From Amphiscolops sp. MND2022 (lineage: Eukaryota), in contig OZ076414.1 of assembly GCA_964187785.1 (NCBI GenBank), forward strand, positions 7,936,001-8,000,000: DNA of 64,000 nucleotides, given 5' to 3'. Shown here in pieces: positions 6,501 to 64,000 of this stretch (its first letter is position 1; each line of letters starts with the position of its first letter). The notes beneath the pieces were generated by a model, which searched no databases, was not told the origin of the DNA, and worked only from the letters and a program-made list of their open reading frames with translations. The position numbers were made by a program, and so were the translations under genes.

Positions 6501-9500
6501 TGCTGAAACAACCCTCACTGAGCTCTAACTGAGAGATGACTTGTCCGCTTCCCTACCCAAATTGGAAGAACGTTTGTCCAGTTTTCGATTTCTTCCAAAG
6601 CCGACGAGACAACGCAAGTTAATGACTGTGTGAACAACTCAACTTTTGTTACCGTATCTGCTCCTTCGAACACAGTGACTGCGACTATGCCAGTACAGTA
6701 ACCAGTTGTTTTGCCTGTTACAATTACAAGTCCAATATTTATTCCAGTAATTGGAATTGCAAACATACCCACTGTAACCGCTACAGCGGAGTTGACATCA
6801 AACAATCCACCCTCAATGTAACTACATAACAATATCGTTCCACAACAGACTATGGCTGCGACAAATGTAACTGGGCCACCCATCATGCCGACAGTAATGG
6901 TGCAGTCACAACCGTTAACCATACCCGCAAGCCATGTTTTACCAAATGTATCTGCATGGACTTTTCAAACTACCACAAGTAGCCGGCAAGTGCAATTCCT
7001 GTCACGGCTTTGATTCCACGGATACCAACATTACCTACAATGGTTCCAATCACAACAAGTTATCCCACTTCATCGCCTGTTATCGCAGTCACTGCTGCAG
7101 GAGGAACGATTTACTATCTCAGTCCATGATCCTTGGCTATAGCCATTATGCATATTAGTTCACCACTTCCGACCACCTCTTCTAATCTTTCATCAACAGT
7201 TTTGCTTTTTTTATTATCTTCAACAACCTCTGGTCCGTATTCATCGACAAGCAGTTCCACAGTTCAATATCTGGCACAAATGTTTATGTCATTGAAAAAG
7301 GACCATCTTCCGGAATGAACTGGCACAGTACAGCGGTGATCCACTTCAATGGCACTAGTGGTTCTGCCAGTTTAAGAGTGCCATTGACTCAGCGCCTCCT
7401 ACCAATGACGTGAAACTGACCTTTTTGGAGACGCTGGTTTCCGGTAAGGCAAAGACGGCGAAGGCCGAATTTGCTTACTGTGGCGCGATGTACGAGATGA
7501 AGATTTTGGACAGCAAGTTTGGACAACCACAGGCAGTTGTGAGCGCTTATTTAAACATACTTGAAAACTACCCAGCAGTCAAAATGCACAATCGTGAGAG
7601 CAATATAAGCTTTTCTGCAACTGTATCGTCACTCGTGTGAGTCTTTCGCTCCTTAAAGTTTGCAAATGATCTGTCAAGTGCTTCCCTTTTAGTCCAAGCC
7701 ATTCAAAAACTTGAATGCCGCGAAATTTAAAGGAAGCTTGGTCGATGAACACTGTGAACACTTGAACACACACACAAAATCTAGACCGCCTAACATTGAT
7801 TCATTTCAATGACTGGCTATAGGAGAAGACAGAGAGAGGCACATGGAAGAGTGAAACCAACTTCTAGCAAGCCAAAACGCCTCAACTGTATCCAAGACCA
7901 AAACAGGAACAAAAGTAACCAATGTTTTTGTCGTCACAACTAGTAACCAAGTCACTACTGTACTGGAACTAAGCCAAATTGTGAAAAACGGTTTGTAGCC
8001 GGCAAAGATTTTCATCCCCTTTCGCGTTGTCAAGCGTTCCGCAGTAAAAACCCTAATACAGCGAACTAACCTAGCCGCTGAGGGCAAACTCTGCTTTTCG
8101 TGTCTCACCGAAGGGCATGCATCCCGCCAATGCCCACAATCAAGAAAGTGCACAGAAGAAGACTGTAGTAGCTCTCATAATGCTTTACTTCTGACAGAAT
8201 TGTTCCTCTGACAAAATCAGGCGAACAGAAAAAAAAAACGAGAAAGTTGCTACAGGTAGTGCAACCAAGGTCAGTCAGAAAGAAACCGGCAGCGAGAGTT
8301 CCGGCATGCCTTCCATGTCTGACGTCAAATGTTTGTTACGGATAATGGAAGTTCAGTGGGAATTTCCGTCATGAAACGAAAAAGTACTTATGTTGTTTGA
8401 CGCAGCATGTAGTCACTCTTGGATTTCAAAAGACCGGCTCAAAAACTCCAGGTTAAAGGCTCTCCAACAAGTTAATCGTCCACGGGATATACACCGAACA
8501 TTTGATCTACACGGAAAGAGTTGAACTCTAGTTTACAACCGTTGTTTCTGGTGGCTCTTATTCATCTTTTCCCGTGAAACCATTTGTTCGAAACGACCTG
8601 AAAATCGGAAATGATTTTATCGACGTTGCAAATCTGAAGGCAAAGTACCCGCACTTGAAATTGATTTCCTTGAGCAAGCACAGTTATGTCGCCGTTGAGA
8701 AGATTCTTGACAAAAAGGTTTTCCCTTCTATCCGCCCATTGAAGCACTTCGAATCCGACCGTGTGAATACTCCAATTGCCGTTCGTTTACCGTTGGATTG
8801 GGTACTGAGTGGTCCACTTCCTTCAACCACGAGTCTTTTTTCGACTTGATTTAAGGCTGTTGCTGCCTCTGGGAAGAATTCAATTTTCGCCAAACAACTT
8901 TGTAGCTGGTATGACAAGGAGACATATGGAGCCTGAAAACAAACTGACTCTCGCTCCGCAGGCGATGCGCGAGCGATGAAGGTTCTCGACGAGACAGCTT
9001 TAAACGATGGCTGCTGATACTAAGTTGGAATGTTGTGGGCCGATGAAAAAAGTACGTTGCCGATCAACTACTTCTCGGCTCTCGTTCACATCAAATCATT
9101 GCGCGTCGCCTTGGAAAAGATCCTCAACTGAAAAAAGTTACAGCAAAACAATCAAAGAGGGTTTTGAAAAGAGGTACATTCTTCAAGTCGACAAACCCGA
9201 GTGCTTCCGAACCGACAACTGTCGGAAGTGGTACGTGCCAAATCATTCCGTGATCCATCGACACAAACGAATGGTGATGCGAAGTTCCAAGGTTATTCTC
9301 TGAACAAAACTTTTTTGACCGGTCCGGATCTGCAGCAAATCTTGGTCCACATCCATTTTCAGATTCCGTCAGTACCCCAACGCCGTCTTTGACGAAATTG
9401 AAGAAATGTTCCTACAAGTATGAGTTTTTCCGAGCGACCAACTGCCTATTCGTTTTTCGTGGCAGGAAGATCCATCAACTGAAGTTGCTGTGTTTCAATA

Positions 9501-11044
9501 CGTCTTTGGTTCGTATGACTCTCCGACTTGTGCAACTTACGCTTTGAAAAGAACAGCAACAGACAACGCTGACATGTTTCCAAAAGCCACTCGGAGCTCA
9601 CACACGAACTTCTACATGGGGGATTATCTCTAGTGGATGACTATCTAGTGGAAATGGACGACTATCTGTGGAAGACGCTGCCCAAAAGTCCAAAGACTTA
9701 GTGAAAACACTTTCACTAGGCGGTTTCAGTCTCTCGAATTTCGTATCGAACAACCCGAGAGTTGAATCTAATTGACCCGAATTCAGAGAATCATAGCAAT
9801 GATGGACAATGATTGCCGACACTGGGCAAGTCCTACCATGTCCTTGGCCTAAAGTGGAATCAAAACTCAGACACACTTGTTGTCAGTCGAAGTACGACGC
9901 CGGACATTAACCGAACTGTCACTCAAAGTGTTGTGTTAAGTCTTGTCTCTGCATTGTACGACCATAGCGGTCTCGTAGCACCGTATACTGTTTACGCACG
10001 ACTTCTATTGAACGACATTTGGCGACTGAATGGTCAGATATAGGACGAAATCTAGACAGATGACATCATAACATAGTTTACAGACTGGAGCTGCGAACTG
10101 CAGCCGCTTTGCGAAATTGGAATACCTAGAAGCAACTTTCAGCAACAATGCGAGTATTTGGAATAACACATGTTCGAATATGTTTCGTGACAGTTCGCAA
10201 GACTTCTTCAGTGCTGTGACTCTTCTGAGAAGTAAGATCAATTCAGAACATGGCAGCTCAACCGAACTAGGTTTCGATTTTGGAAAAGCACGTGTTGCAC
10301 CAATGAATGCCTTGACAAGGACAAAACTTGATCTTCAAGCTGCTTTTCTTTCCGTGAGACTCAAAGATGACATCCAAGAAGCCTTGACTCCGAAAATAGA
10401 AGAATTTCACATGGAGCGATTGTACTACGGTACTCCAACGGTTAAATTCGCTCGAAAAGCAACCGGTTTTTGTAGCAAACTTTATTGCGGAAGTTTTGAT
10501 GCTTACAACTGTAGACGAGTGGTTTCATGTTGAGTCTGCCGACAACCCTGCGGACGCAGGAACGGGATGCTTGTCTGCTAAGGCACTCCATGAAAGTTGT
10601 TGGTTGAAAGCCCCCAGTTTTTTGATAACTTCTGAAGGGCCTTTCAAGCCATGCGAAAACATCCGAAGTAATTTCAAGCAAGCAAAACTGGATGCGAGTG
10701 ATAAACTAGTAACAGAGTCGTCGACGAGAATATCTGCACACCAAACTGCAATTGCAAAAACTTTGGATTGGCAAAAGTATTGCTCATAGGAGAATTTTCT
10801 GCGCATTGCAGCCTATATGTTGCGCTTTTTGTAGAAGACTAGTACTTGTGCCATCACTCATCCAGCGAAACATGAAATTAATGAACAACATCTTTTTTAC
10901 GTGGTCCAAACCGAGCCCTTTCCATTGGAAAAAATATATGCGCAAGTCGTCGCCACTTAACATTATGTCTAAAATCACACAGTTGTCCCACTTTAATGGA
11001 CCAAATGGTCTTGTAGGAAAACGAACAAACAACTTGATTTTGCC

Positions 11045-12170
11045 ATGTTTGATAAGAAACATCCCATTATTCTGGAAGCCCCTCATCGTTTGATCAGACT
11101 ACTGTTGGAACACTTGCATAATCAAGAGTGTCCCCAGGGTGTTGCTTGCCTCAGAGCATTGGTACAGCAGCCATTTGCTACGAACCGCGCACTGCGAATA
11201 ATTGTTTCGAGGTGTGCAGTTTGCCGCAAACGTAGAGCTGAAAATCTGACTCCAATAATTGTGGACTTACCCCGCGAAAAATTCAAAGAACCTCCGTTTC
11301 CAAACACTGGCGTTGACTTCTTCGGATCGTTATTTGTATTGGTCAAGCTACTAAAAAACGTTGGGGTTTTCTTTATACTTGACTCACGACTCGAGCTGTC
11401 CACTTCGACGTGGCCTCAAGCATGGACACCAGAAGCCACGTGATGGGAATTGAAGCGTTATTTGCCCGTCGTGTCATTCCGTCCGGTATTTGGCCCGACA
11501 ACGTTACAAACTTGGTGGCCACTGAAAATAATTTTTGTTGAATATCAAGAACTGGAATCAGCAATTCTTCGGAGAAACACTTGTGAAGAAAAGTATAAAG
11601 TGGAAGTTTAATCCACCTAATGCTCCGCATCACGGAGGTGTTTGAGAACGTGTTGTGCGAAGATTCAGTCACGTTTGTTACGCTATATTAAAGACCGTTG
11701 ACTGACAGCTGAAATTTTGATGACAACGTTCTGCTTGTTGCAACAATGTCTCAATGCTCGTCCAAATACATCAGCATCTACAGATCCACCAGACCGAGAC
11801 GCGCTAACCTCAAACCATTTCCCGCTAGGAACCGCCAGTTCAACGTTACCTACTCATTTTCACCCCAAAGTAGGCCGTCGAAAGCGGTACGGTCGTGCCC
11901 AAGCGTACTCAGACGCTTTTTGGAATCATTGGCTGGAGGAGTACGTTCCAAATCTGAAACTTCGTTCCAAATGGTGCAAATCGTCCAACAGAGACCTCAA
12001 GACTGGAGATCTTGTTTGGATAGTTGATCCAACTGTTCCTAAAGGAGACTACCCTCATGCCCGAGTTGTGAAATTCGGCACCGATGCCGACGCCAAATCT
12101 ACCGAATTCAATACGTCAACTAGTAATCTAGTTCGTCCCGTTGTTAAGTTAGCTTCCGTTCTCCCCGTTC
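11045..12170 (+). pseudogene. BEL/Pao integrase and C-terminal (DUF5641-like) region
   Basis: HPIIL..HLH..CAVCRKRRA zinc domain, PFPNTGVDFFG core, LNARP..LTSNHF, FWNHWLEEY; broken by frameshifts. Confidence 0.85.
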
Positions 12171-49587: not shown

Positions 49588-52098
49588 TCAAAAAACAGTT
49601 TCTATTTTATGCTTCACAAACAAGTCAGAAACTGTATCGCTACGTTTTCTGAAGAAAATTGTTCGTATAATTCGTTTTTGCATTAATAGAATCTCATTCA
49701 GCACTGAATGTCTTGTACCGCCGTATATGAGCAAACCGTACAGTATAATTGGTTTTGCATATGCTTGATAAAACCTTAAGAGAGCTTTCCGGGAAAACCA
49801 ATAACGTGCCTTGTAGACCAAACCATTAAATTTAGCTAATCTTTTCTGGATACTCGCTATATGGCTATGAAAATTCAATCTTTTGTCGATACTAACGCCT
49901 AGGTACTTGAATTTATCTACAATGTCTATTTCGCCTGCTAAACCCTCAAGTTCGTCAATTTCCGTTGCGGTTATCGATTTACCAAAGGGTAAAATTGTAC
50001 ACTTAGATACATTGACAGTCATTTTGTTAACCGAAAACCATTGATTCATGCTTTCTAGATCCAATTCTACATCTTTTGTTACATTTCTACAGCTTTTAGA
50101 AGTTACAATTGCAGTATCATCAGCAAAAAGAATCATGTTTGACTTCTTACATGTTTCAGGCAAATCATTTATGTATATCAAAAACAAAAGTGGGCCCAAG
50201 ATTGAACCTTGTGGAACTCCACAATCAATGCTCCTCGATGAAGACTTTTGATTACCCGAAAATACGAATTGTTCTCTGTCAGATAAGTAATCTCTGAGCA
50301 AATTTTCAATTTGACCGCGTAGTCCAAAGCTATTTAGTTTTTTATTAAGAAGATTGTGATCAACGGTATCAAAGGCTTTTTTTAAATCAATGAAAGCTGC
50401 CAAGCCATAGTGTTTTTTGTCAATTGTTTTTCTCATAAATTCAGTGATTTCTGCAATTGCATGTGCACAAGAAAAATTTTCTCTAAAACCGAATTGTTTG
50501 GGAGTTAGTAGTTTATGCTTCGCCAAAAATTTTGTTATTCGTTTGTGAATGAGTTTTTCAAAAATTTTGCTCAGCGAAGTCAAAAGACTAATAGGGCGAT
50601 AATTATCCGGTTGGGAAAAATCACCTTTCTTTAAAAGCGGAAGAACTTTCGCAATTTTCATCGACTTAGGAAACTTTGAATCTTCTATACACTCATTGAA
50701 AATATTGGCCAAAAATTGACTAATTGAAGATGCCGCAAGCCTCAAAAGTTTATTAGAGATGCCATCATGACCAGAAGAAATTTTGTTCTTTAGGTGTTTG
50801 ATTATACTGTAAACTTCAGATGCATCTGTCTCGAAGAGAGCGAAAGTTTGAACAGGTCCGTCCGCGTCGAAGTCAACATTGGGTAAGGATTCACTACACT
50901 CATTTGCAAGTTTTTTTCCAATACTTACAAAAAAATCATTAAATTTCTCAACGTCTACTTCTCTTTGTTTCTTGGTTTCTTTCCCACAAAAATGGTTAAA
51001 ACAGTTGAATAATTCTTTTGAATTGCACACGTTTTTGATTTTTTTGTCATAATAGGATCGTTTAGCTTTCCGATTTTCACTGGTGACCGAGTTACGGAGT
51101 TTCTTGTAAACTAACTCGTTCTTTTTGCTGGCCTCTTTTACGTAAAAGGCATGCGCTTTATCACGTTTATGAATCAAAGATTTGATATGGTTTGTTACCC
51201 AATTTGATCTTTTCTTCGTAGCATCAAAAGTTTTGTGTGGAGCATACTTCTCGGAAGCTGAATTCAGAACACCGGTGAGGTACTCTAATTTGCTTTCAAC
51301 TGTGTCACACTGACATTTACGAAGTGCTTGATCTATGTAAAACAAAAATTTCAAATCATGATCTTCTTTAGAAAAGCCGGAAAAATCACGAAATTGAATA
51401 GCATCATTATCGTTGCAATGATTTGTGTCATATAAAATAGGAAATCTCAATGCATAGTGGTCACTGATTTTGTATTTGAGAGTTTCAACTTTTATTTCTT
51501 TAGTTGATATGCAGAGGTCAATGCATTTCGAAGTTGACAGAGTCTCTCGAGTAGGCTCTTCATTCTGCACAGATAGTCCGAATGCTTCCAAACAAAGTTC
51601 TAGTTTTTTGGTTTTATAGTCTAGATTATCAAGAACATCAATATTGAAGTCTCCTACGAGTATGGAATCTCCTTTCATTTCAAACAAATCAGTTAGAAGA
51701 CAATCCATTTCATCAAAAAAGACAGCTTTAGCATCTGGTGGTCTATAAATCAGGCAGACATTCAGCGGACCTAAAGCGTTCCGATGGATTGTGACAATTA
51801 CGTGTTCAATATTAGATTTACATTTGGTTGTAGTGTAATTCACGTCTTCTCTCGCGTAGAAAGCTAAACCGCCACCAGGTTTGTTCAGTCTATTTGATGT
51901 TTCAATTTCAGAGTAGTCGTCGAGCCAATAAAGGTCAATAGGGTCATTTTCTGTCAACCAAGTTTCACAAAGGCAAATCAACTCAGGTTTTACTTCAAAA
52001 TCATCAAAAGTAGTAATTAACTGGTCATGATGGCACCTAAGTGAACGTATGTTCATGTAAAAAATGTCTGAGGTTTTAAAAGTTTCCACAGATTCCAT
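49588..52098 (-). CDS. LINE ORF2: AP endonuclease + reverse transcriptase (836 aa; continues to 49257 across a frameshift in the A6 run 49590-49595, ~946 aa if repaired)
   Basis: YMNIRSL, LCETWL, IYRPP, GDFNID, ISDHY; NYRPISLL, QFGFR, FIDLKKAFDTVDH, GVPQGSILGPLLFLIYINDL, FADDT, KYLGV. Confidence 0.95.
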   Translation of the reverse strand: MESVETFKTSDIFYMNIRSLRCHHDQLITTFDDFEVKPELICLCETWLTENDPIDLYWLDDYSEIETSNRLNKPGGGLAFYAREDVNYTTTKCKSNIEHVIVTIHRNALGPLNVCLIYRPPDAKAVFFDEMDCLLTDLFEMKGDSILVGDFNIDVLDNLDYKTKKLELCLEAFGLSVQNEEPTRETLSTSKCIDLCISTKEIKVETLKYKISDHYALRFPILYDTNHCNDNDAIQFRDFSGFSKEDHDLKFLFYIDQALRKCQCDTVESKLEYLTGVLNSASEKYAPHKTFDATKKRSNWVTNHIKSLIHKRDKAHAFYVKEASKKNELVYKKLRNSVTSENRKAKRSYYDKKIKNVCNSKELFNCFNHFCGKETKKQREVDVEKFNDFFVSIGKKLANECSESLPNVDFDADGPVQTFALFETDASEVYSIIKHLKNKISSGHDGISNKLLRLAASSISQFLANIFNECIEDSKFPKSMKIAKVLPLLKKGDFSQPDNYRPISLLTSLSKIFEKLIHKRITKFLAKHKLLTPKQFGFRENFSCAHAIAEITEFMRKTIDKKHYGLAAFIDLKKAFDTVDHNLLNKKLNSFGLRGQIENLLRDYLSDREQFVFSGNQKSSSRSIDCGVPQGSILGPLLFLIYINDLPETCKKSNMILFADDTAIVTSKSCRNVTKDVELDLESMNQWFSVNKMTVNVSKCTILPFGKSITATEIDELEGLAGEIDIVDKFKYLGVSIDKRLNFHSHIASIQKRLAKFNGLVYKARYWFSRKALLRFYQAYAKPIILYGLLIYGGTRHSVLNEILLMQKRIIRTIFFRKRSDTVSDLFVKHKIETVF

Positions 52099-56190: not shown

Positions 56191-57056
56191 TGTTACGACA
56201 ATTTACTGGGGTAGTTCTAAAGCTAGTCGCAATTGTTGTTTTAACAGGTGTTGACGTTCTAGCAACGGAGGTGTTTTCAGGCTCGGAATCAGAATCCTGG
56301 TCATTGACGCACGTGGGGCGTTTTTTACTCAAAGGCGCTATCAATTTAAGCATTTCCTTTTGGTTCTCAGCTAGTATTTTTGACAAATCAGACAAAATCT
56401 CTTTCCTCAAAGACGTCTTTATTTCGTCTAAGTTTTCAGGTTCAATTCTGATAGTTTTACTAGGGCCTGCAATTAAATCCTCAGATGGGATGTTGTCGTT
56501 CACAAGAGTTTCACAATCTTGAGAAATTAGCTCAGCTACAGCTTTCCTCTTTTGACATCTAGTTGTCATTTTTCGGGTTGAAAATTCAAAGTCTTCGGTA
56601 CAATTGAATTCTTCGAATAACTATTTTTCGTTATTACAACGGAACGTTTTAAGTACAAAGCAGTGATCAACTAGTCAACTTCCAACATAGAAAATTGAAA
56701 TTCGAAGTAAAAGTATGACTGGCAAAAAATGGTTACGGAATTAAAACGGATCAAAAAGTTTTGGGTTTGTAAATATTTAGATGTTGGGAAAGGAAACAAA
56801 TGATGCTGAAATAGACGTATTCCAATTGTTAACACAAACAAAACCTGTGTTACATTTGACAGCAGTATAAAAATAAGTTTAACCTGAACATTAGCAATTG
56901 CCGACGGAAATTGTCCGTTGGGGTAATACAAATCCTTCATGATATAAATTAGCATCGATACAAAACAATACACGGTTATGATGACATGGCATGGAAATAG
57001 CAAGCCATTTGAAGCAAATTGACCTTACGTTGCGTTTTTGGTATTATTAGGTGACA
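56191..57056 (-). mobile_element. Probable solo LTR of another Gypsy family, carrying a gag-like N-terminal ORF (56569 to 56191)
   Basis: ORF MTTRCQKRKAV..LDEIKTSLRKEILSDL.. reaches ..CGT AAC A| at TG 56191, in the same codon phase as the family-X LTR end. The right boundary (GTGACA 57056) is a guess. Confidence 0.5.
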
Positions 57057-57387
57057 TATAAAGTAAGAGGGTTGTTCAACTACAATATTTTCATGGACAA
57101 ATCAGTTGCAACGTAAGTCAATCGTCATTCTTATCGCCATCATCATGGAGTTTGAAGGTAGGGAATTAAGACATAGCAACTGGTTAATGCAATATGAAAT
57201 GCTATACGAACTTAAGGTCAAGAGCATATTTTATCCAATTCATCTTCAACTTGTCATCAAATTTTGAGCTCTGTTTTTTCTTACAGTACAGCCTATCCTC
57301 TGTGAAATTTTGCTTCGAACACCATTAAATGCGTCGGTTAAAAAAGCTTCGTTCAGAATCCGTTTAATTTAATACTTCATTACTACG

Positions 57388-57518
57388 ATTTTACAATTCG
57401 CTCCGTAGATACTCCGTACGTATTAAGATTGGTTATAGCTGAGCGGCGGAATACAATTTTACAATTTGCTCCGTAGTTGCTCCGTACATATTAAGATTGG
57501 TTATAGCTGACCGGCGGA
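57388..57518. repeat. 68-bp tandem duplication (2 copies)
   Basis: ACAATT(C/T)GCTCCGTAG..TATTAAGATTGGTTATAGCTGA(G/C)CGGCGGA at 57393 and 57461. Confidence 0.9.
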
Positions 57519-58132
57519 GGCTGACGGAGAGAAAGCGGAAAGCGTAGGCGAATTGATTCTCTTTTCTCTTAGCTAATTGGCGTTGCTAGGGGCAACCAAG
57601 CATAGTTCTACCGGCATGAGCTCAAATAATTCAGTTGAGGCGCAACGCTATTGGTCCGTAAAAAAGTAGAAATACCCATTACTAGCTTTGTTAATTGACG
57701 CTGTCACAACGTTGTAAACATTTGCTTAAAGTCACTTGACTGTAGCTTTAAGTGAATATTGACAACTACTTTGATGCCCGGAAAACAATTCCACTATATT
57801 TTATATCTTTTTCATTTTAGATTGTATGAACTCCGTTGGGATCTCGGAGCTAAAATTATCTTTGATGTTTTCATATTAGTGTGGAACAGGAGAGAAAATG
57901 ATCCCATATAGGAAAATGTTTCTGTTTTAATATTTAGATTAGTATGACAAAATGCAGAAGACGATACCGGGAATAAAAATAGCGTTATGCGTGATAACAT
58001 TAAACCGGAAGTTTTAGCCAGTCCGAAATCATTTCTGAAAATATTCCGTGGCGCTTACGTTGAATTTTATGATCGACAAATTGTTTGCAAGTTATCTAGT
58101 TGTACTGTAAGTATAGATTAAATTAGCTCACG

Positions 58133-58839
58133 TTATTGTTTCGTGGTCTTTACAATATTCACGTCCTCTTCCACTTCCCATTGCGATGCATCATTCGCAA
58201 CCACGACTGGGAGCGGGTCGTGAAAGGCCCTTCTTGTCGCTAGGAACACAGGCCATCCCTGACAATAGGGAATCTCTTTTTTGATCTGCACTGGGGGGCG
58301 GCGGCTGAGGTAATTTCTAATTTGGTGAGGGCCACGTCCACGGCCAACAGACATGTAGACTTCTCTTTCCTCTTTTTCGAGCTCTAGCGACAATTTTGCA
58401 AATTAATCATTGGCTTCAGGAGTGCATAAGTCATTCAGGTAATCTCTTACTGTCTTTCCTTTTTCTTGCGTACATGTAGGCGGCTCATTTAGGTCATTGA
58501 GTTGTCCTTTTGCTGCTACCTTTTCGGGCTGAGGCATGTTCATTCTTCGTGAAGGCTTTAATGGTTCAGGTCTTCATAAAAGTCGCTTTCTGAGTCTTTG
58601 GAGGCTGGAGGCAGATTAAATGTCATATTCTTTTTAGGCGAGAGCCTAATTTTTTTTGGAGATGATTCAGACTCGAAGGTCGAATTAATTTCAACGTCAC
58701 TGCCCCGGAAAACTTCAGTTGACGAGTCGCTCAGATTGAGCCTTCCCACCAGGTTTACTGGTAGGGTTTTCATTGGAGTGCTTGTTTTGGCAATTTCTTC
58801 ATCAGAAGAGATGTCGAATACAAGAGAGTATCCGTTCAT
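58133..58839 (-). pseudogene. Decayed ORF of unknown function (~230 codons, acidic/Ser-rich)
   Basis: ORFs 58558-58839 and 58133-58393 are bridged by an open stretch with one frameshift and one TAA. No recognisable domain. Confidence 0.3.
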
Positions 58840-59217
58840 TTTGTGTTTGAAGAATGCTGGTTTTTAGGAGAAAATGAGACAAATTTTCAATTATCTTAAT
58901 GCAAGCTGGTCAAGCTGAGAATTTGGACGACAAATGACCGTTTCAATTTTCTTTCTGTCGTGGCTTTCCTCGGAGGTTCATTGGTCGGTTTTTCCGCTTT
59001 CGTTCCGGTCCGTCCTGACCTTTTAAGGCGACGAACTTTTATCTTCACTGTTATTGGTCAAAATAGGAAATCTTCATCCTAATTCCGATTTTTTTCATCA
59101 GCGTCGTTATGATGTCATCAATTTTTTAAAAAAGGTTACGTTCACGAAACGAAATTTCTAAAATTTAGATTGTTTTGAAGAAACTGTTGTTGCTCTGTTG
59201 CTCAACTTCATTCGCAA

Positions 59218-61110
59218 ATGGAAAAAGATGCTATTTCCCTTACTGAAGAGATGGAAGACGAAGAGACTGAGTGTCCTGTTGCAGCGGCTACTGGCTTTGT
59301 GAGTGGGAACTAGACTGTGTACAATTACTCCGAAGTCGACGTTATGCATTCGGAAGGAATGATTGGGTTGTCTATTTCAGGTTGGTAAATTCTTTCTGAC
59401 TTTCATGGGTAATTCGGACTATTTTTTGGTGGTCAGCCTGTTAGTCCTACCCGCTTTTCTGACGCGTCTGAGACCAGATCTTGATTTTCAGTAACTCAAC
59501 CTGGTAAGTCTCCCACAGTTTCCGGAGGGTTCGCGGAGACTTCTCCTGCAGTGTTACCATCGGCTTCCACTCTGATTTCACTTAGCTCTCCTCCCAACTT
59601 TGGGGCTGTTCTTGAGAAAACTGTTTTTCCCGATGTTCCTGAAGTATTCATTCCTACTAAGGACATAGGTAAATCTAGTTCTCAGACCCAACTTGAAGCA
59701 GAGTCTCATGGAGGTGAGAGTGACTCCCCCTCCGAAGAGGAAACGGGTTAGTGGGGTACTAAATGGTGTATGATGATACAACTACAGGGGCCTGTAGTAA
59801 GCGTTATCTTGTTTTGTAGAGTCTCCTGTACGTCAAGGTCATTTCCAATCCGTAAGCTCCACCCAAACGTGTGAAGACAGTCGCACTACCTTCGCCTCCA
59901 GCGTTGACTGCTGCACCGGGAGGGTGGATTAGTTAGTATTGTACTGTGATTCATTGTGAACGTGTGGGAATCGTGGATTGTTTGGGCAGTTGTTGTATAA
60001 GTATTTTTGTTGTAGGCAATGACGATGACTTGTTAGGGATTGCCTTGAGCCCGGAACGTTTGAAGCTTCTGAGTCAACAAATCGTGGATGAGGTTGATAC
60101 GCGGACTGCCCGAACTATTCGGAATAGTAAGTGCTCTTTGATGGTGTTCATGTGCTAGGGCGTCTCTGTTTCGTACTGTTCTTGTGATTATTTTTTGGTG
60201 CTCCCTGGGGTCATTTCGTTGGTATTTGTTGTAGGTTTTAGTGAGCTGACTGCTAAGGTGGATGCGCACGTGGGCAACCGACCAAAAGCAAAGAAGTACA
60301 GGCGGAAGAACATGTTGCATAGACGTATGTTGGATTCTCATCCTGCATACCCTAGCTTTGTGAGCGGTTCGAAGCGCGGGGCAGGGACGCATTTTCATTG
60401 TGTCATGTGTAAGTGTGACGTGGCTATGAATGCTCATGGATCCCGCGAATTTGCTCGGCATTTCCAATCCGATGGGCATTGGTTCAAGAATGACGTATAC
60501 CGTGTCCACATGGGTATGCCTGTGTTAAACAGGTTGATGGAGCCTATGCAATGAAGTGAGGAGAAGCTTGCCGAATACCGTGCTCTTGTCTCGTGTTATC
60601 CATAGTTTGGATTCAAAGCAGATGCCACTCGCTGTTGTTGGAGCCAGTCCCAGTTTATTGAGGGTTATCAGTGATAACCGTACGGATGGTCGCCGTTTTG
60701 TGGTGTATCAGGGGTTCACCGAAGAACTCTTCCTACAAGGCGTCCGACAAGCTCATCAAGACATATTTGGGATGGTAGAAGTGACTACTATTGTAGAGTA
60801 TGTTGTCCATCGTCTCAAGAACGCGGTGTATGAAGAGTGGACCGAAGACAAGATTGTGCTGTGTAGATGTCTCCGAAAGGGCTCCGTGGATTTTTGTGAT
60901 TATCGTGAGTTGCTGACGGATTTGAGTGAATTTTGGCCAAAGATTCGTCCTTACATCCGATGTACTGTGAATCCAGAAGCACGTGGGAAATCTGCTACTG
61001 TTGGTACTATTGCGTTATTTGGGGTGTTTGTACTTGTATTGTGCATGTATATATACACACGTTTTCTTTGCTTTCCAGATGTTAGGGACAGATTGGCATT
61101 TGATTGCTGA
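59218..61110 (+). pseudogene. Second decayed, probably spliced gene with the same BED-like finger (hAT-related?)
   Basis: CVMCKCDVAMNAHGSREFARHFQSDGH at 60399-60479, the same C-x2-C-x16-H-x5-H spacing as 34129-34209. Low-complexity N-terminal region; candidate acceptors (TTTTGTAG ~59820, TTGTTGTAG ~60015 and ~60233). Confidence 0.45.
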
Positions 61111-61440
61111 TAATATGATCGTGCAGCGCTTTGGTCTGCTACGGTTTGTTCTCGATACGTGTAAGTATGGTGTTTTGATTTTTGTTATTTAATTTTGTTT
61201 TCCTTCTTCGTGGCTGTTCTTTCCGATTGATGTTTGTAGTTCTGTCGACTCGTCTGGTACGGTTGTTCTTCCGTTTTCATAATTTTGGTGTTGTTTTAGT
61301 CCATATCAATTTCACGAAGATGCTTCAGCGACGGAAGGATTACGGATTTCATGGGTACAGTGAATTGTGCCATTTTGTCTACTGTCTGCTGTTGAAGACT
61401 TAATACATGCACTTAATACATGCGGTCGTGATTTCACTCG

Positions 61441-61546
61441 CACAAGGTCGGACCCGCACTGGGTAGGACACAGGACTTTTTAACTAGACAAGGTCGGACC
61501 CGCACTTGGTAGGACCTGAGACCTGTTTTTACTAGCACAAGGTCGA
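61441..61546. repeat. 46-49 bp tandem repeat (~2.2 copies)
   Basis: ACAAGGTCG at 61442, 61488 and 61537. Confidence 0.85.
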
Positions 61547-61806
61547 ACTAACAAAATGGCAAATGAAAAACCAAATTAGTTTCAAATAAAATAAAAATGA
61601 AATGAGCTTCACCAAACTTGAAATTAAAACTGTTTGAGAAAGTTGTCGAGAGCATTCAAAAACCGAAAGACTCACTGAAATTGTGTTAAAATTACTGACA
61701 AAAATGTGAGTTTAACTGTTTAACCGGGTATTCGGTTTTTGATGTTATATGAAAATAATTTCACTATGTTGAATGGAACTAATTCCGTTTTTGTAATCTG
61801 CTTTTG

Positions 61807-61852
61807 TATGTTATTTGGTACGTGAGTTTGGCGTTGTTTGATTAACTTAAAA
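61807..61852 (+). promoter_or_regulatory. Conserved upstream box + TATA-like element (possible Pol III upstream promoter); paralog at 62053-62092
   Basis: TATGTTATTTGGTACGTGA is identical in both units. TTAA(C/T)TTAAAA sits at -25 to -15 in both. The spacer between them is diverged (16 vs 10 nt). Confidence 0.35.
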
Positions 61853-61866
61853 TTGCTGCTCTTCCA

Positions 61867-62012
61867 ACCGAGTTAGTGTAGTGGTTAATCACGCTGTCGA
61901 GCTCATCATTTGTTAGGATGAGCTCGTTACAGTATAGGCAATTATATGTCTCGGAAGGTGAATCGGTAATTGCATCTGCGTGTTGAGAGTGGCTTGACAC
62001 TAACTCGGTTTT
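61867..62012 (+). ncRNA. Candidate ~146-nt Pol III small RNA, copy 1 (unassigned; vault-RNA-like or tRNA-derived)
   Basis: 5' ACCGAGTTAGTGT pairs perfectly with 3' ACACTAACTCGGT, followed by TTTT. A-box-like TAGTGTAGTGG. Perfect internal hairpin CGAGCTCATC/GATGAGCTCG; second helix GCAATTA/TAATTGC. Confidence 0.55.
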
Positions 62013-62106
62013 ATGTCATTTGAAACTAATTGTTTTTTTTGTTATTTGCTCGTATGTTATTTGGTACGTGATCAAGTATGATTAATTTAAAACTGCTTCT
62101 CTTCCA

Positions 62107-62254
62107 ACCGAGTTAGTGTAGTGGTTAATCACGCTGTCCAGCTCATCGTTTGTTAGGGGCAGCTCGCTACAGTATACGCAATTATATGTGTCGGAAGGTG
62201 AACCGGTAATTGCATCTGAGGGTTGTACCGTGCTTGACACTAATTCGGTTTTTT
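62107..62254 (+). ncRNA. Candidate Pol III small RNA, copy 2 (240 bp downstream)
   Basis: Same 5' end and A box; closing stem kept with one G-U; T6 terminator; first internal hairpin partly disrupted. Confidence 0.5.
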
Positions 62255-64000
62255 ATAGCCACCACAAAATCCTTCCAGATATTGTTTTCGGGATTCTTAT
62301 TCCCAAATGTTATTTGGGAATTCACCAATGTTTCCATATTGGTTGTTTGACTCGGCTTAAAATAGCAACGCTCGGTGGTTCAGAATTATAAGGTGGTTGG
62401 GAATTATATAATGGAAAAAACAATATCAGTTGGTTTAATCAAATAGTCCCCAACTGGAACAACGTTTGGAACAATTAACTAGTTCCTTTGAATTAAATTC
62501 ATCAAATTAGTTTTTTGCTTGGAATACTGTAAGTCGGACTTTAACTTTCAGAAACCAAAACGTTATGCGCATTTGAAAATTCATGCACATTTGGAAATTC
62601 ATGCACATTCACAAATATATTAATTATTTAGTTATTATAATCAAAACACCCCCCCCCCCCCCAACTGGAACAACAATGAAAATTTAAAACCTCGATTTTA
62701 CCGAACGTTGACTTTTATTAATTAATTCAGTTCATTTTTTTTTGAAATACGGTTAATTTCAAATTATTGTTCGGTATACGTGAGAAGAATATAGAATTCG
62801 GTCTCTATATCTTATTTTTGTATTGAAAAGGATCGCAGTTCTGGAGAATATTTTAATGAAAGTTGGAGTAACAAAATGGGTTTGATGATTCAACAACCGA
62901 ATCCCGCAAACTTTTGGAGAAACCAATAAAACATATGAACATATATGAATCATGATTTCGAGAGAGCAAAACACAACTTTTTATATTTCGAAAAATATTT
63001 TTACTATGTAATTCAAATTTTTATGAAGTTATTTCGAAGATCTGTCTTCTACCGCTAAGCTACGGTCGCCTTATTTTTTGATAAAATTATTTCCATCTTA
63101 TTGCGAACGCAACAATACGTTTTAGAAAGTTCTGGTCCATTTAAAACATAAAATTATCAAGTTCACCCGCCAATTTGTAAGTGTAACGGCTGCTTGATCC
63201 CTTCAATTGACCAAACTTTACGCCGCCCTGAATTCGGTGCTCGGCACTGCGGATCGTTACCGAACACTGCTTGCTTCGTAGATTAAAAGGACTGTATCTT
63301 GACTTAGTAGGATCCAATGATCCCGAATTGCATTTCTTCCTTGTCTCTTAACACGTCCAACTCTCCACAAGTTGAGAGTAACTATCTTAGTCGCCCTAAG
63401 TCTTTGGCGAAAAGTCGAAAAGAGGTGAAGAAATGAATTGAGAATTGAAATGGTCCTAAGACCCAACTTGACTACAGCTATTCAGTCGTTAAAATCTCTC
63501 TCTAATAATGGTATACATGTGGTTTACAATTCTACAGTAAGTATAGAACAAATATCAGATGAAATATGTGGTATAAATAAATGACATTTAAAGCATAAAA
63601 TGAAGTTATTGGCTAAGTAAACAAACAATGTGGTGGTTTTGGCATGTTGGTCAGGTGGGTTAGAAAGTATGTTTACACAATGTAAATATCAGTAATTTCA
63701 ACAGAGATGAATTTCCTTCAAGGTCATATGAGAGAATCACATAATAATTGATACATCAAAATTTGGGTAATTCATGGGGTCCGACCTAGGTCACTTTGGG
63801 TGTTAATTGCTCGGAACCCAGGGGAGATACGGGGTAGGTTGTTAAGAGTGAAAAGTTAGTGAATCACCACCACTATATGTGTGCCAAGTTTCAAGGTGGT
63901 TGAATGAGAGGTTTACCGGGACGGGGGGGTGGCCCTTTTTTTACATAGGGTCATTCTTGCTTAGACTTGTATTTTTCCATCTAAAATCTTGATAAGTTTT

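What the first reader, a model, noticed from the sequence alone, without database searches (positions are those of the whole stretch)
61775..62260. Tandem pair of unassigned ~146-nt structured Pol III-like small RNA genes
Seen: two units exactly 240 bp apart. Each has a conserved 19-nt upstream box, a TATA-like element at -25, and a tRNA-like start (7-nt acceptor-like strand, TA, D-arm GTGT-AGTGGTTAATC-ACGC with an A box). A 13-bp panhandle pairs the 5' and 3' ends, two internal helices lie between them, and an oligo-T terminator follows. Two differences between copies (closing stem C>T; TCGG vs CCGG in the small inner stem) swap G-C for G-U and so keep pairing. There is no canonical anticodon arm or T-loop, so it is not a tRNA; GGTGAA(T/C)C is at best a degenerate B box. 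Established: vault RNAs are Pol III transcripts of this size with an A box and paired ends, and Y/stem-bulge RNAs have paired ends and upstream promoters. Inference: a vault-like or new small RNA gene family, and the only non-TE-looking functional unit in the window. Caveats: copy 2 has a damaged first hairpin, and box-to-TATA spacing differs by 6 nt.
Basis: partly seen in the sequence, partly recalled or inferred. Interest (0 to 1): 0.85.

Follow-up and report, generated by a model that had tools for sequence, protein, structure and literature searches.

The report
tRNA-derived small-RNA-like unit in a repeat
The two look-alike "small RNA genes" are real. They are two of at least seven copies of a tRNA-derived unit, each sitting inside a long DNA segment present at four or more places in this animal's genome, and nothing yet shows that the RNA is made or that its folded shape is under selection.

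Summary
Two about 147-nt units lie 240 bp apart (61866-62012 and 62106-62254). Each has a tRNA-like 5' part with an A box at +9, a 14-bp pairing of its 5' and 3' ends, internal hairpins and a T4/T6 run. No Rfam family matches (Vault, Y_RNA, sbRNA, tRNA), and ARAGORN calls no tRNA.

The pair is not a stand-alone locus. I used the chance open reading frame on the minus strand as a protein query and found five more units in another assembly of the same species. All seven sit in a roughly 1.2-kb element inside a repeat of at least 14 kb, present at four or more loci. The other loci have one unit per element, though one locus holds three elements.

Seven copies show no covariation. The RNA body is usually no better conserved than the non-RNA sequence downstream. 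The "conserved upstream box" is deleted or mutated in other copies. No B box is recognisable. Unit 1's perfect hairpin is unique to it.

What all copies keep is the A-box 5' end, the terminal stem (with some damage) and the T run.

Best reading (0.45): a lineage-specific, tRNA-derived Pol III unit, comparable to rodent 4.5SI/4.5SH genes and of unknown function. Main rival (0.33): a dead relic kept similar by recombination. This scan has not noted the family elsewhere.

The parts
61402..62861 (+). Window copy of the roughly 1.2-kb repeat element that carries the unit. It is 1.46 kb here because of the internal 240-bp duplication.
   Evidence: BLAST homology to L006, L007 (three copies) and L008 at 75-88%. 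The left edge abuts the end of another multi-copy element (56191-61400).
61866..62012 (+). Unit 1: predicted Pol III transcript including its T4 run (62009-62012).
   Evidence: Sequence; fold -53.7 kcal/mol, z -5.0; aligned with six other copies.
62106..62254 (+). Unit 2: second copy including its T6 run (62249-62254).
   Evidence: 88% identical to unit 1; fold z -1.9; closer to L8a (93.8%) than to unit 1 (87.6%).
61866..61879 (+). 5' strand of the 14-bp terminal stem of unit 1. It pairs with 61997-62010.
   Evidence: This strand is invariant in all seven copies.
61997..62010 (+). 3' strand of the terminal stem of unit 1.
   Evidence: In other copies this strand carries a wobble change, two mismatches and a 4-nt insertion.
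61874..61884 (+). A-box-like motif (TAGTGTAGTGG) within the tRNA-like D-arm region. The same motif is at 62114-62124 in unit 2.
   Evidence: One mismatch to TRGCNNAGTGG at +9 in all seven copies.
61898..61926 (+). Perfect 10-bp hairpin found only in unit 1.
   Evidence: The other six copies have three mismatches here and instead can form GCUGUC/GGCAGC.
61938..61973 (+). Second internal hairpin (7-bp stem GCAATTA/TAATTGC). It encloses the degenerate B-box-like GGTGAATCGG at 61957-61966.
   Evidence: Stem kept in all seven copies. No ungapped match to GGTTCGANNCC has fewer than 3 mismatches anywhere in any copy.
61806..61825 (+). 20-nt upstream box of unit 1. The unit 2 box is at 62052-62071.
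   Evidence: Exact in both window units. Not conserved across the family or in the other assembly.
61841..61854 (+). AT-rich TATA-like stretch at about -26 to -14. The unit 2 equivalent is at 62081-62094.
   Evidence: Sequence. Moderately conserved, 0.81-0.91. Two changes in unit 2 of the other assembly.
62293..62413 (+). Downstream conserved block. It holds a partial box copy (62307-62317), a TATA-like CTTAAAAT and an 18-nt tandem.
   Evidence: As conserved as the RNA 5' end, 0.92-0.99. No significant fold, and no conserved T run.
61432..61545 (+). 46-bp tandem repeat at the left end of the element.
   Evidence: TRF. Conserved among copies at 0.90-0.97.

Best explanation
Each unit is a tRNA-derived Pol III-type transcription unit.

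Shown:
- The first roughly 30 nt copy a tRNA acceptor strand plus D arm, including an A box at +9.
- The rest has diverged into a non-tRNA body.
- The last 14 nt pair with the first 14.
- A T run follows at once.
- The unit sits in a roughly 1.2-kb element inside a repeat of at least 14 kb, present at four or more loci.
- The window's 'pair' comes from a 240-bp internal duplication about as old as the copies at other loci.
- The copies exchange sequence by recombination or gene conversion.

Inferred:
- TFIIIC or TFIIIB would be placed by the A box together with the AT-rich -31/-14 flank.
- Transcription would start at the A residues at 61866/61867 and stop in the T run.
- The product would be a roughly 146-nt RNA with a U tail (a La-binding end) and a terminal double-stranded 'minihelix'. 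That kind of end is recognised by exportin-5 in Y RNAs.

In kind it resembles rodent 4.5SI and 4.5SH RNA genes: lineage-specific, tRNA- or SINE-derived, low-copy or embedded in long repeats. No function for the RNA is shown.
For: - Anatomy.
- All seven copies keep the A box at +9, have no internal T4 run, and have their first T4-T7 run directly after the 3' stem strand.
- The 5' 22 nt, starting exactly at the predicted +1, form the longest invariant run in the whole element. The 25-nt bin there has the highest identity, 0.989.
- Terminal stem, D-arm-like hairpin and hairpin 2 can form in all copies; 96.8% of cells are paired.
- The two RNA bodies show 0 differences between the window and the other assembly over 292 nt, against 1.2% overall (about 3.5 expected).
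- For pairs involving L8a, the RNA body is more conserved than its flanks (p 0.005 to 5e-5).
- Low copy number: only three ORF-call hits, all in the large repeat, so it is not a dispersed SINE or MITE.
- The analogue, tRNA/B2-derived 4.5SI genes (three genes 4-40 kb apart) and 4.5SH genes inside 4-5-kb repeats, uses an A box, a B box and a -31/-24 TATA-like box (PMC10137851, PMC7279448).
Against: - No B box is recognisable; the best ungapped match has 3-4 mismatches in every copy. A type 2 promoter is therefore incomplete.
- The upstream box that could compensate is not conserved.
- No covariation: RNAalifold covariation term +0.29; 68 of 500 shuffles do as well.
- Paired versus unpaired variability is 11/72 against 21/73, p 0.07.
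- Several copies carry damaging changes: a 4-nt insertion and mismatches in the terminal stem, and 13-nt and 5-nt insertions elsewhere.
- In most pairs the RNA body is no more conserved than the non-RNA downstream part.
- The 22-nt invariant run lies within the simulated 95% range of 24.
- The minus strand folds equally well.
- There are no expression data and no homologue from another species.
Confidence: 0.45

Rival explanations
1. Dead relic. An old tRNA-derived sequence (pseudogene or fossil SINE head) that happens to lie in a long low-copy repeat. Its apparent conservation reflects the age of the duplications and gene conversion among copies, not selection. It is not transcribed, or only as noise.
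For: - The whole 1.2-kb element is similarly conserved (mean 0.88). Non-RNA blocks reach 0.965-0.987.
- RNA identity roughly equals downstream identity in most pairs.
- L7a is a mosaic: its upstream matches L7c at 98.5%, its RNA and downstream match L7b at 98.7-98.9%. This shows recombination among copies.
- No covariation.
- No B box.
- The upstream box is not conserved.
- Insertions and mismatches occur in the stems.
Against: - All seven copies keep the A box, the exact +1-proximal 22 nt, a T run at the same place and no internal T4 run.
- There are 0 differences in 292 nt of RNA body between assemblies, while four changes fall in unit 2's promoter.
- L8a comparisons show the RNA body better conserved than its flanks.
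Confidence: 0.33
2. A divergent member of a known panhandle Pol III RNA family (vault RNA, or Y RNA/stem-bulge RNA), too diverged for the Rfam models.
For: - The loose vault description fits: 80-150 nt, box A, weak box B, panhandle, T run (PMC8824774).
- Some Y RNA features fit: paired ends, a GUG/CAC step within the stem, a U tail (PMC4726728).
- From my own memory only, a lead and not a test: the 5' GUAGUGGUUAAUC and 3' CUUGAC resemble human Y RNA ends.
Against: - No Vault, Y_RNA or sbRNA hit even at E<=10 on 159 nt.
- The terminal stem is a continuous 14-bp helix. It lacks the bulged cytidine and the opposite 3-nt bulge that define the Ro60 site (PMC4726728).
- At 146 nt it is outside the 100+/-20 nt given for Y RNAs.
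- No GTTC-type B box.
Confidence: 0.08
3. A DNA-level element, not an RNA gene: a miniature inverted-repeat or foldback transposon with 14-bp terminal inverted repeats that has been carried along in the larger repeat.
For: - A perfect 14-bp inverted repeat at the ends.
- Internal palindromes.
- Both strands fold significantly.
- Degenerate copies of the end motif lie nearby: 61566-61596 inverted, 61722-61745, 61769-61797 and 62020-62040.
Against: - No target-site duplication at the ends.
- In every copy the homology runs straight through the ends into shared flanks of hundreds of bases.
- Only three chance ORF-call hits exist and all three lie within copies of the large repeat, so there is no sign of independent mobility.
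Confidence: 0.05
4. One reading: a type 3 (upstream, PSE plus TATA) Pol III gene in which the 20-nt box at -60/-41 is the essential promoter element.
For: - The box is 20/20 identical in both window units while the spacer beside it diverged.
- Its position resembles that of a proximal sequence element.
- A partial third copy lies 253 bp downstream.
Against: - Box-to-TATA spacing differs by 6 nt between the two units.
- The box is mostly deleted in L7a and L7c and has 3-4 changes in L6a, L7b and L8a. That makes it no better conserved than its surroundings, 0.81-0.84.
- It has two changes in unit 2 of the other assembly.
- No U6 or 7SK gene of this species was available for comparison.
Confidence: 0.05

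Closest known systems
Rodent 4.5SI and 4.5SH RNA genes (tRNA/B2-derived and 7SL/B1-derived Pol III small RNAs)
   Same: - Lineage-restricted small RNA genes born from a tRNA- or SINE-like sequence.
- Internal A box plus an AT-rich -31/-24 flank.
- Low copy number (4.5SI: three genes 4-40 kb apart) or embedded in long repeat units (4.5SH: 4-5-kb repeats).
Source: PMC10137851, PMC7279448.
   Different: - Those genes have a functional B box and proven abundant transcripts. Here no B box is recognisable and expression is untested.
- This unit is longer and closes into a 14-bp terminal helix.
- There is no sequence relationship.
Vault RNA (Rfam RF00006)
   Same: 80-150-nt Pol III RNA with box A near the 5' end, paired 5' and 3' ends and a T-run terminator (PMC8824774).
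   Different: - No match to the Rfam model.
- No GTTC-type box B.
- The genome is reported to hold a separate array that does match Vault (not verified here).
Y RNA / nematode stem-bulge RNA (Rfam Y_RNA, sbRNA)
   Same: 5' and 3' ends form a long stem, there is a 3' oligo-U tail, and genes are clustered. The terminal minihelix is the kind of end linked to exportin-5 (PMC4726728).
   Different: - No Ro60-site bulges.
- 146 nt rather than 100+/-20.
- No Rfam hit.
- It has a tRNA-like A box, which Y RNA genes (type 3 promoters) do not rely on.
tRNA-derived SINE heads and TE-borne tRNA-like Pol III cassettes noted elsewhere in this genome
   Same: A tRNA-like 5' part with an A box inside repeated DNA. 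Earlier notes describe such cassettes in LTRs and terminal repeats of this genome's transposons.
   Different: - Low copy number.
- No poly(A) or LINE-type tail.
- No target-site duplications.
- Homology always continues into the same long flanks.
- The 3' end pairs with the 5' end.

Membership tests
tRNA | Cloverleaf with anticodon arm and T arm, recognised by tRNA finders and the Rfam tRNA model | tested here: not met
   ARAGORN finds 0 genes in the window and in L001 and L003-L008. No Rfam tRNA or tRNA-Sec hit at E<=10. Only the acceptor strand and D arm are tRNA-like.
Vault RNA | Match to the Rfam Vault covariance model (box A with its conserved 3' flank, box B) | tested here: not met
   No hit at gathering score or at E<=10 on 159 nt. 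No GGTTC-type box B; the best match has 3-4 mismatches.
Vault RNA | 80-150-nt Pol III transcript with a panhandle joining the 5' and 3' ends and a T-run terminator | tested here: met
   147 nt, a 14-bp terminal stem and a T4-T7 run in all seven copies. Transcription itself is untested.
Vault RNA | Association with vault particles (MVP) | not testable with these tools
   No expression or RNP data are available.
Y RNA / sbRNA | [quoted passage not shown] | tested here: not met
   The predicted terminal stem is a continuous 12-14-bp helix. The only irregularity is a 2-nt bulge on the 3' side, above the stem in unit 1.
Y RNA / sbRNA | Size of 100+/-20 nt and a match to Rfam Y_RNA or sbRNA | tested here: not met
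   146-147 nt, with no hit at E<=10.
Y RNA / sbRNA | Upper-stem GUG-CAC motif and a 3' oligo-U tail | tested here: inconclusive
   A GUG/CAC step lies within the terminal stem (AGUGU/ACACU) and a U tail is present. Both are short motifs and are not in an identifiable 'upper stem'.
Type 2 Pol III gene (tRNA/SINE type) | A box at about +8 to +20 | tested here: met
   TAGTGTAGTGG, one mismatch to TRGCNNAGTGG, at +9 in all seven copies.
Type 2 Pol III gene (tRNA/SINE type) | B box (GGTTCGANNCC) 30-90 nt downstream of the A box | tested here: not met
   The best ungapped matches have 3-4 mismatches. GGTGAA(T/C)CGG fits only if 2 nt are deleted.
Type 3 Pol III gene (U6/7SK/Y type) | Conserved proximal sequence element at a fixed distance from a TATA box | tested here: not met
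   The box is deleted in two of seven copies and mutated in three. Spacing varies by 6 nt. It is polymorphic in unit 2. Comparison with this species' U6 promoter was not possible.
SINE / MITE | Many dispersed copies whose homology ends at the element's termini, flanked by target-site duplications | tested here: not met
   Seven units at four loci, all inside the same long repeat. Homology runs from -450 to +600 around the unit. No duplications at the ends. Only three chance ORF calls exist among about 15 billion proteins. A direct whole-genome nucleotide search was not possible.

The most novel reading that the evidence does not exclude
A genuinely new, lineage-specific family of structured Pol III small RNAs. 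Each would be about 146 nt, with a tRNA-derived 5' module and a 14-bp terminal minihelix. The family would be kept in several copies by concerted evolution inside a long repeat that also carries a JmjC/SET gene, and would act as a stable RNP RNA in the way vault, Y or 4.5S RNAs do.
Probability: 0.22. Interest if true: 0.55.

Novelty: new member of a known kind. Interest (0 to 1): 0.35.

Why it matters
If the units are transcribed, they would be another independent case of a tRNA-derived sequence becoming a lineage-specific small RNA gene, this time in an invertebrate-type, transposon-rich genome that already shows many tRNA-like Pol III cassettes. It would be a tractable case, because seven diverged copies are available for mutational comparison.

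If they are not transcribed, the result still matters for annotation. A convincing-looking 'novel ncRNA gene pair' turns out to be one module of a long low-copy repeat. Its most gene-like features, the exact upstream box and unit 1's perfect hairpin, are peculiar to this locus.

The way the other copies were found may also be reusable. A chance open frame across a non-coding repeat served as a protein query, which gave access to assemblies that can only be looked up by protein.

Tried and rejected
- Rfam at gathering score on the whole window, at E<=10 on 1.3 kb and on 159 nt, and at gathering score on L003 and L006-L008. Only chance-level snoRNA and miRNA hits appeared.
- ARAGORN on the window and loci: no tRNA genes.
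- Exact 19-nt scan of metagenome and viral contigs. One unrelated tRNA-like fragment turned up (L002); there was nothing viral.
- Full-text search for four sequence strings and for the assembly accession: nothing.
- Taxon identification through LINE homologues and cluster names: no names were returned.
- Neighbouring ORFs 60195-61110. They have no Pfam or Atlas identity. They belong to a multi-copy element whose other copies (L004, L005) end at window 61400 and lack the unit, so the unit is not part of that element.
- The idea that the downstream block (62366-62535) is a second Pol III gene with the same promoter layout. Rejected because the fold is not significant (z -1.0) and the T6 run is TTTATT in the other copies.
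- The idea that the minus-strand open frame is coding. Rejected because 12 of about 56 residues differ between the two window units from about 18-20 base changes, and no protein family matches.
- tRNA-Sec reading (9-bp acceptor stem, upstream promoter). Rejected because there is no anticodon arm with UCA in a proper loop and no Rfam hit.
- Earlier notes, searched by sequence: blank.
Full report
**1. The observation**

- Two direct repeats, 61836-62012 and 62076-62252, lie 240 bp apart and are 88% identical.
- The 20-nt upstream box is exact at 61806 and 62052, with none expected by chance.
- The tRNA-like 5' motif and the 3' end motif each occur only twice in the 64 kb.
- Each unit starts at AACCGAG (61866; 62106) and carries TAGTGTAGTGG at +9, one mismatch from the A-box consensus.
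- Its first 14 nt pair with its last 14 nt before the T run.
- It ends in T4 (unit 1) or T6 (unit 2).
- Unit 1 folds well (-53.7 kcal/mol, z -5.0). Unit 2 folds only marginally (z -1.9).
- The minus strands fold as significantly as the plus strands (z -6.7 and -2.3). The statistic therefore reflects palindromic DNA and does not name a strand.

**2. Known families**

- ARAGORN finds no tRNA.
- Rfam gives nothing at gathering score on the window.
- At E<=10 on 1.3 kb and on 159 nt, Rfam lists only chance-level snoRNA and miRNA matches. Vault, Y_RNA, sbRNA, tRNA, tRNA-Sec, 7SL and U6 are all absent.
I could not verify it. If it is right, the vault RNA slot is already filled.

**3. The unit is not unique**

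No tool here searches this species' genome by nucleotide. One minus-strand frame happens to stay open across the whole unit, so I used its 57-residue translation as a protein query.
- The word-indexed search returned two hits and the exhaustive HMMER search one more. All three come from one ENA assembly (ERZ25074608) that is 97-99% identical to the window where they overlap.
- Fetching their contigs gave L006 (one unit), L007 (three units) and L008 (one unit).
- A neighbouring repeat ORF led to L003. This is the window's own locus in that assembly, 98.8% identical over 6.4 kb.
- That makes seven distinct units at four loci.
- Only three such chance ORF calls exist among about 15 billion predicted proteins, while transposon proteins of this species appear with up to about 100 members. 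A family of hundreds of dispersed copies is therefore very unlikely. This argument is indirect.

**4. Context**

- Homology between the window and the other loci runs from 61402 to 62861. That is about 450 nt upstream to 600 nt downstream of the unit.
- Each of the other elements has one unit. The window has two because of an internal 240-bp duplication.
- That duplication is not recent. Unit 1 is 87.6-89.0% identical to every other copy, while unit 2 is 92-94% identical to L7a, L7b and L8a.
- L006, L007 and L008 are collinear with one another for more than 12 kb at 83-89% identity. The shared stretch passes through 58-bp satellite arrays to ORFs with JmjC and SET domains.
- L003 continues into the same sequence to the right of the point where the window diverges from it, at 63181. 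The window locus is therefore a fourth copy of a repeat of at least 14 kb.
- On the left, the element abuts another multi-copy element (56191-61400). That element's other copies end at the same point and lack the unit.
- I could not tell whether the long repeat is a giant transposon or a segmental duplication. Its upstream limits differ among copies.

**5. Is the RNA under selection?**

*Structure.* With seven copies, RNAalifold gives a covariation term of +0.29. The single double-sided change is in a 2-bp helix. In the shuffle control, 68 of 500 shuffles do as well. Variable columns number 11 of 72 paired against 21 of 73 unpaired, p 0.07, and that comparison is biased towards the structure.

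*Terminal stem.* The 5' strand never varies. The 3' strand shows a C>U wobble in four copies, C.U and C.A mismatches in one copy each, and a 4-nt insertion in two copies.

*Unit 1's hairpin.* The perfect hairpin is unique to unit 1. The other six copies have three mismatches there. Unit 1's four differences (one on the 5' arm and three adjacent bases on the 3' arm) all restore Watson-Crick pairs. This fits either selection or one-step correction of a quasi-palindrome at the DNA level.

*Conservation along the element.* Mean pairwise identity is 0.88. The bin covering the unit's 5' end is the highest at 0.989, but non-RNA bins reach 0.987 and 0.965. The longest invariant run, 22 nt, starts exactly at the predicted +1. 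It is still within the simulated 95% limit of 24. In most pairs the RNA body is as conserved as the non-RNA downstream sequence. Only comparisons with L8a show an excess.

*Recombination.* L7a is a clear mosaic. Its upstream is 98.5% identical to L7c, and its RNA and downstream are 98.7-98.9% identical to L7b. The copies therefore recombine or convert.

*Polymorphism.* Between the window and L003, the two RNA bodies have no differences in 292 nt, where about 3.5 are expected. Four changes fall in unit 2's box and TATA-like stretch. This is weak support for constraint on the bodies, and it counts against constraint on that promoter.

**6. Promoter signals**

- The A box is present in all copies.
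- No B box is recognisable in any copy.
- The 20-nt box sits at -60/-41, a plausible place for a proximal element. It is mostly deleted in L7a and L7c, carries 3-4 changes in L6a, L7b and L8a, and is no better conserved than its surroundings.
- The AT-rich stretch at -31 to -14 is moderately conserved. Such TATA-like flanks do matter for genes with type 2 promoters (PMC7279448).
- All copies keep a T4-T7 run directly after the stem, and none has an internal T4 run.

**7. Verdict**

*Shown:*
- The unit is a real, low-copy, tRNA-derived module with an A box, a terminal helix and a terminator-like T run.
- It is embedded in a long repeat.
- It belongs to no family in Rfam.

*Inferred:*
- It is, or recently was, a Pol III transcription unit producing a roughly 146-nt U-tailed RNA with a terminal minihelix.

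*Nearest analogues.* In kind, the nearest known things are rodent 4.5SI and 4.5SH genes (PMC10137851), not vault or Y RNAs. The Y RNA Ro60-site bulges and the Rfam models for both families were tested and not met (PMC4726728; PMC8824774).

*Probabilities:*

| Reading | Probability |
|---|---|
| tRNA-derived Pol III unit | 0.45 |
| Silent relic homogenised by recombination | 0.33 |
| Divergent vault or Y RNA | 0.08 |
| Inverted-repeat DNA element | 0.05 |
| Box acting as a PSE | 0.05 |

Expression data and a whole-genome and cross-species nucleotide search would settle it.

Noticed in passing
window 56191-61400; L004 4778-10882; L005 4860-10892: A multi-copy element of at least 5 kb ends exactly at 61400. 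It holds frameshifted ORFs (60195-60554, 60556-61110) with no Pfam or Atlas identity but 32 homologues at 52-97% identity in the same assembly. It looks like an unclassified transposon family.
   Followed up: partly
L007 2483-5437 (-); collinear parts of L006, L008 and L003: The repeat of at least 14 kb carries ORF pieces with JmjC/Cupin_8 (KDM2/7-like by Atlas features) and SET domains. That is a histone demethylase plus methyltransferase pair present at four or more loci at 83-92% identity. Whether this is a giant transposon or a segmental duplication is unresolved.
   Followed up: partly
L006 6304-6839; L007 12324-12996; L008 6696-7356; L003 about 8436-9030: 58-bp satellite arrays lie at the same relative place in every copy of the long repeat.
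   Followed up: no
window 62293-62413: This block is as conserved among copies as the RNA 5' end (up to 0.987). It holds a partial copy of the upstream box, a CTTAAAAT element and an 18-nt tandem with GGTGGTT cores. It looks like an old, decayed sister of the unit. It has no significant fold and no conserved terminator.
   Followed up: yes
window 61432-61545: A 46-bp tandem repeat (2.4 copies here, 1-2 in other copies) has very high conservation (0.94-0.97) at the left end of the element.
   Followed up: partly
window 61898-61926: Unit 1's perfect 10-bp hairpin differs from the family consensus by four changes, all of which restore pairing. Three of them are adjacent and equal the reverse complement of the opposite arm. 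This is a textbook signature of quasi-palindrome (template-switch) correction.
   Followed up: partly
window 63181 onward versus L003 6369 onward: The window and the other assembly diverge completely at 63181. L003 continues into the long repeat, so the window probably carries an insertion there that runs beyond its end.
   Followed up: partly
L007 15607-16230 versus 10739-11860 and 9611-10525: L7a is a recombinant. Its upstream is 98.5% identical to L7c, and its RNA body and downstream are 98.7-98.9% identical to L7b. The switch lies near the invariant 5' end of the unit.
   Followed up: partly
window 49588-52098 (-): An 836-aa ORF with an apurinic-type endonuclease and a reverse transcriptase (non-LTR retrotransposon). 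A 97% identical copy (cluster of 93 members) lies on another contig of the species.
   Followed up: partly
L006 about 9650-9970: In L6a, an inverted copy of the unit's own upstream region, including the box, is inserted just downstream of the T run.
   Followed up: no
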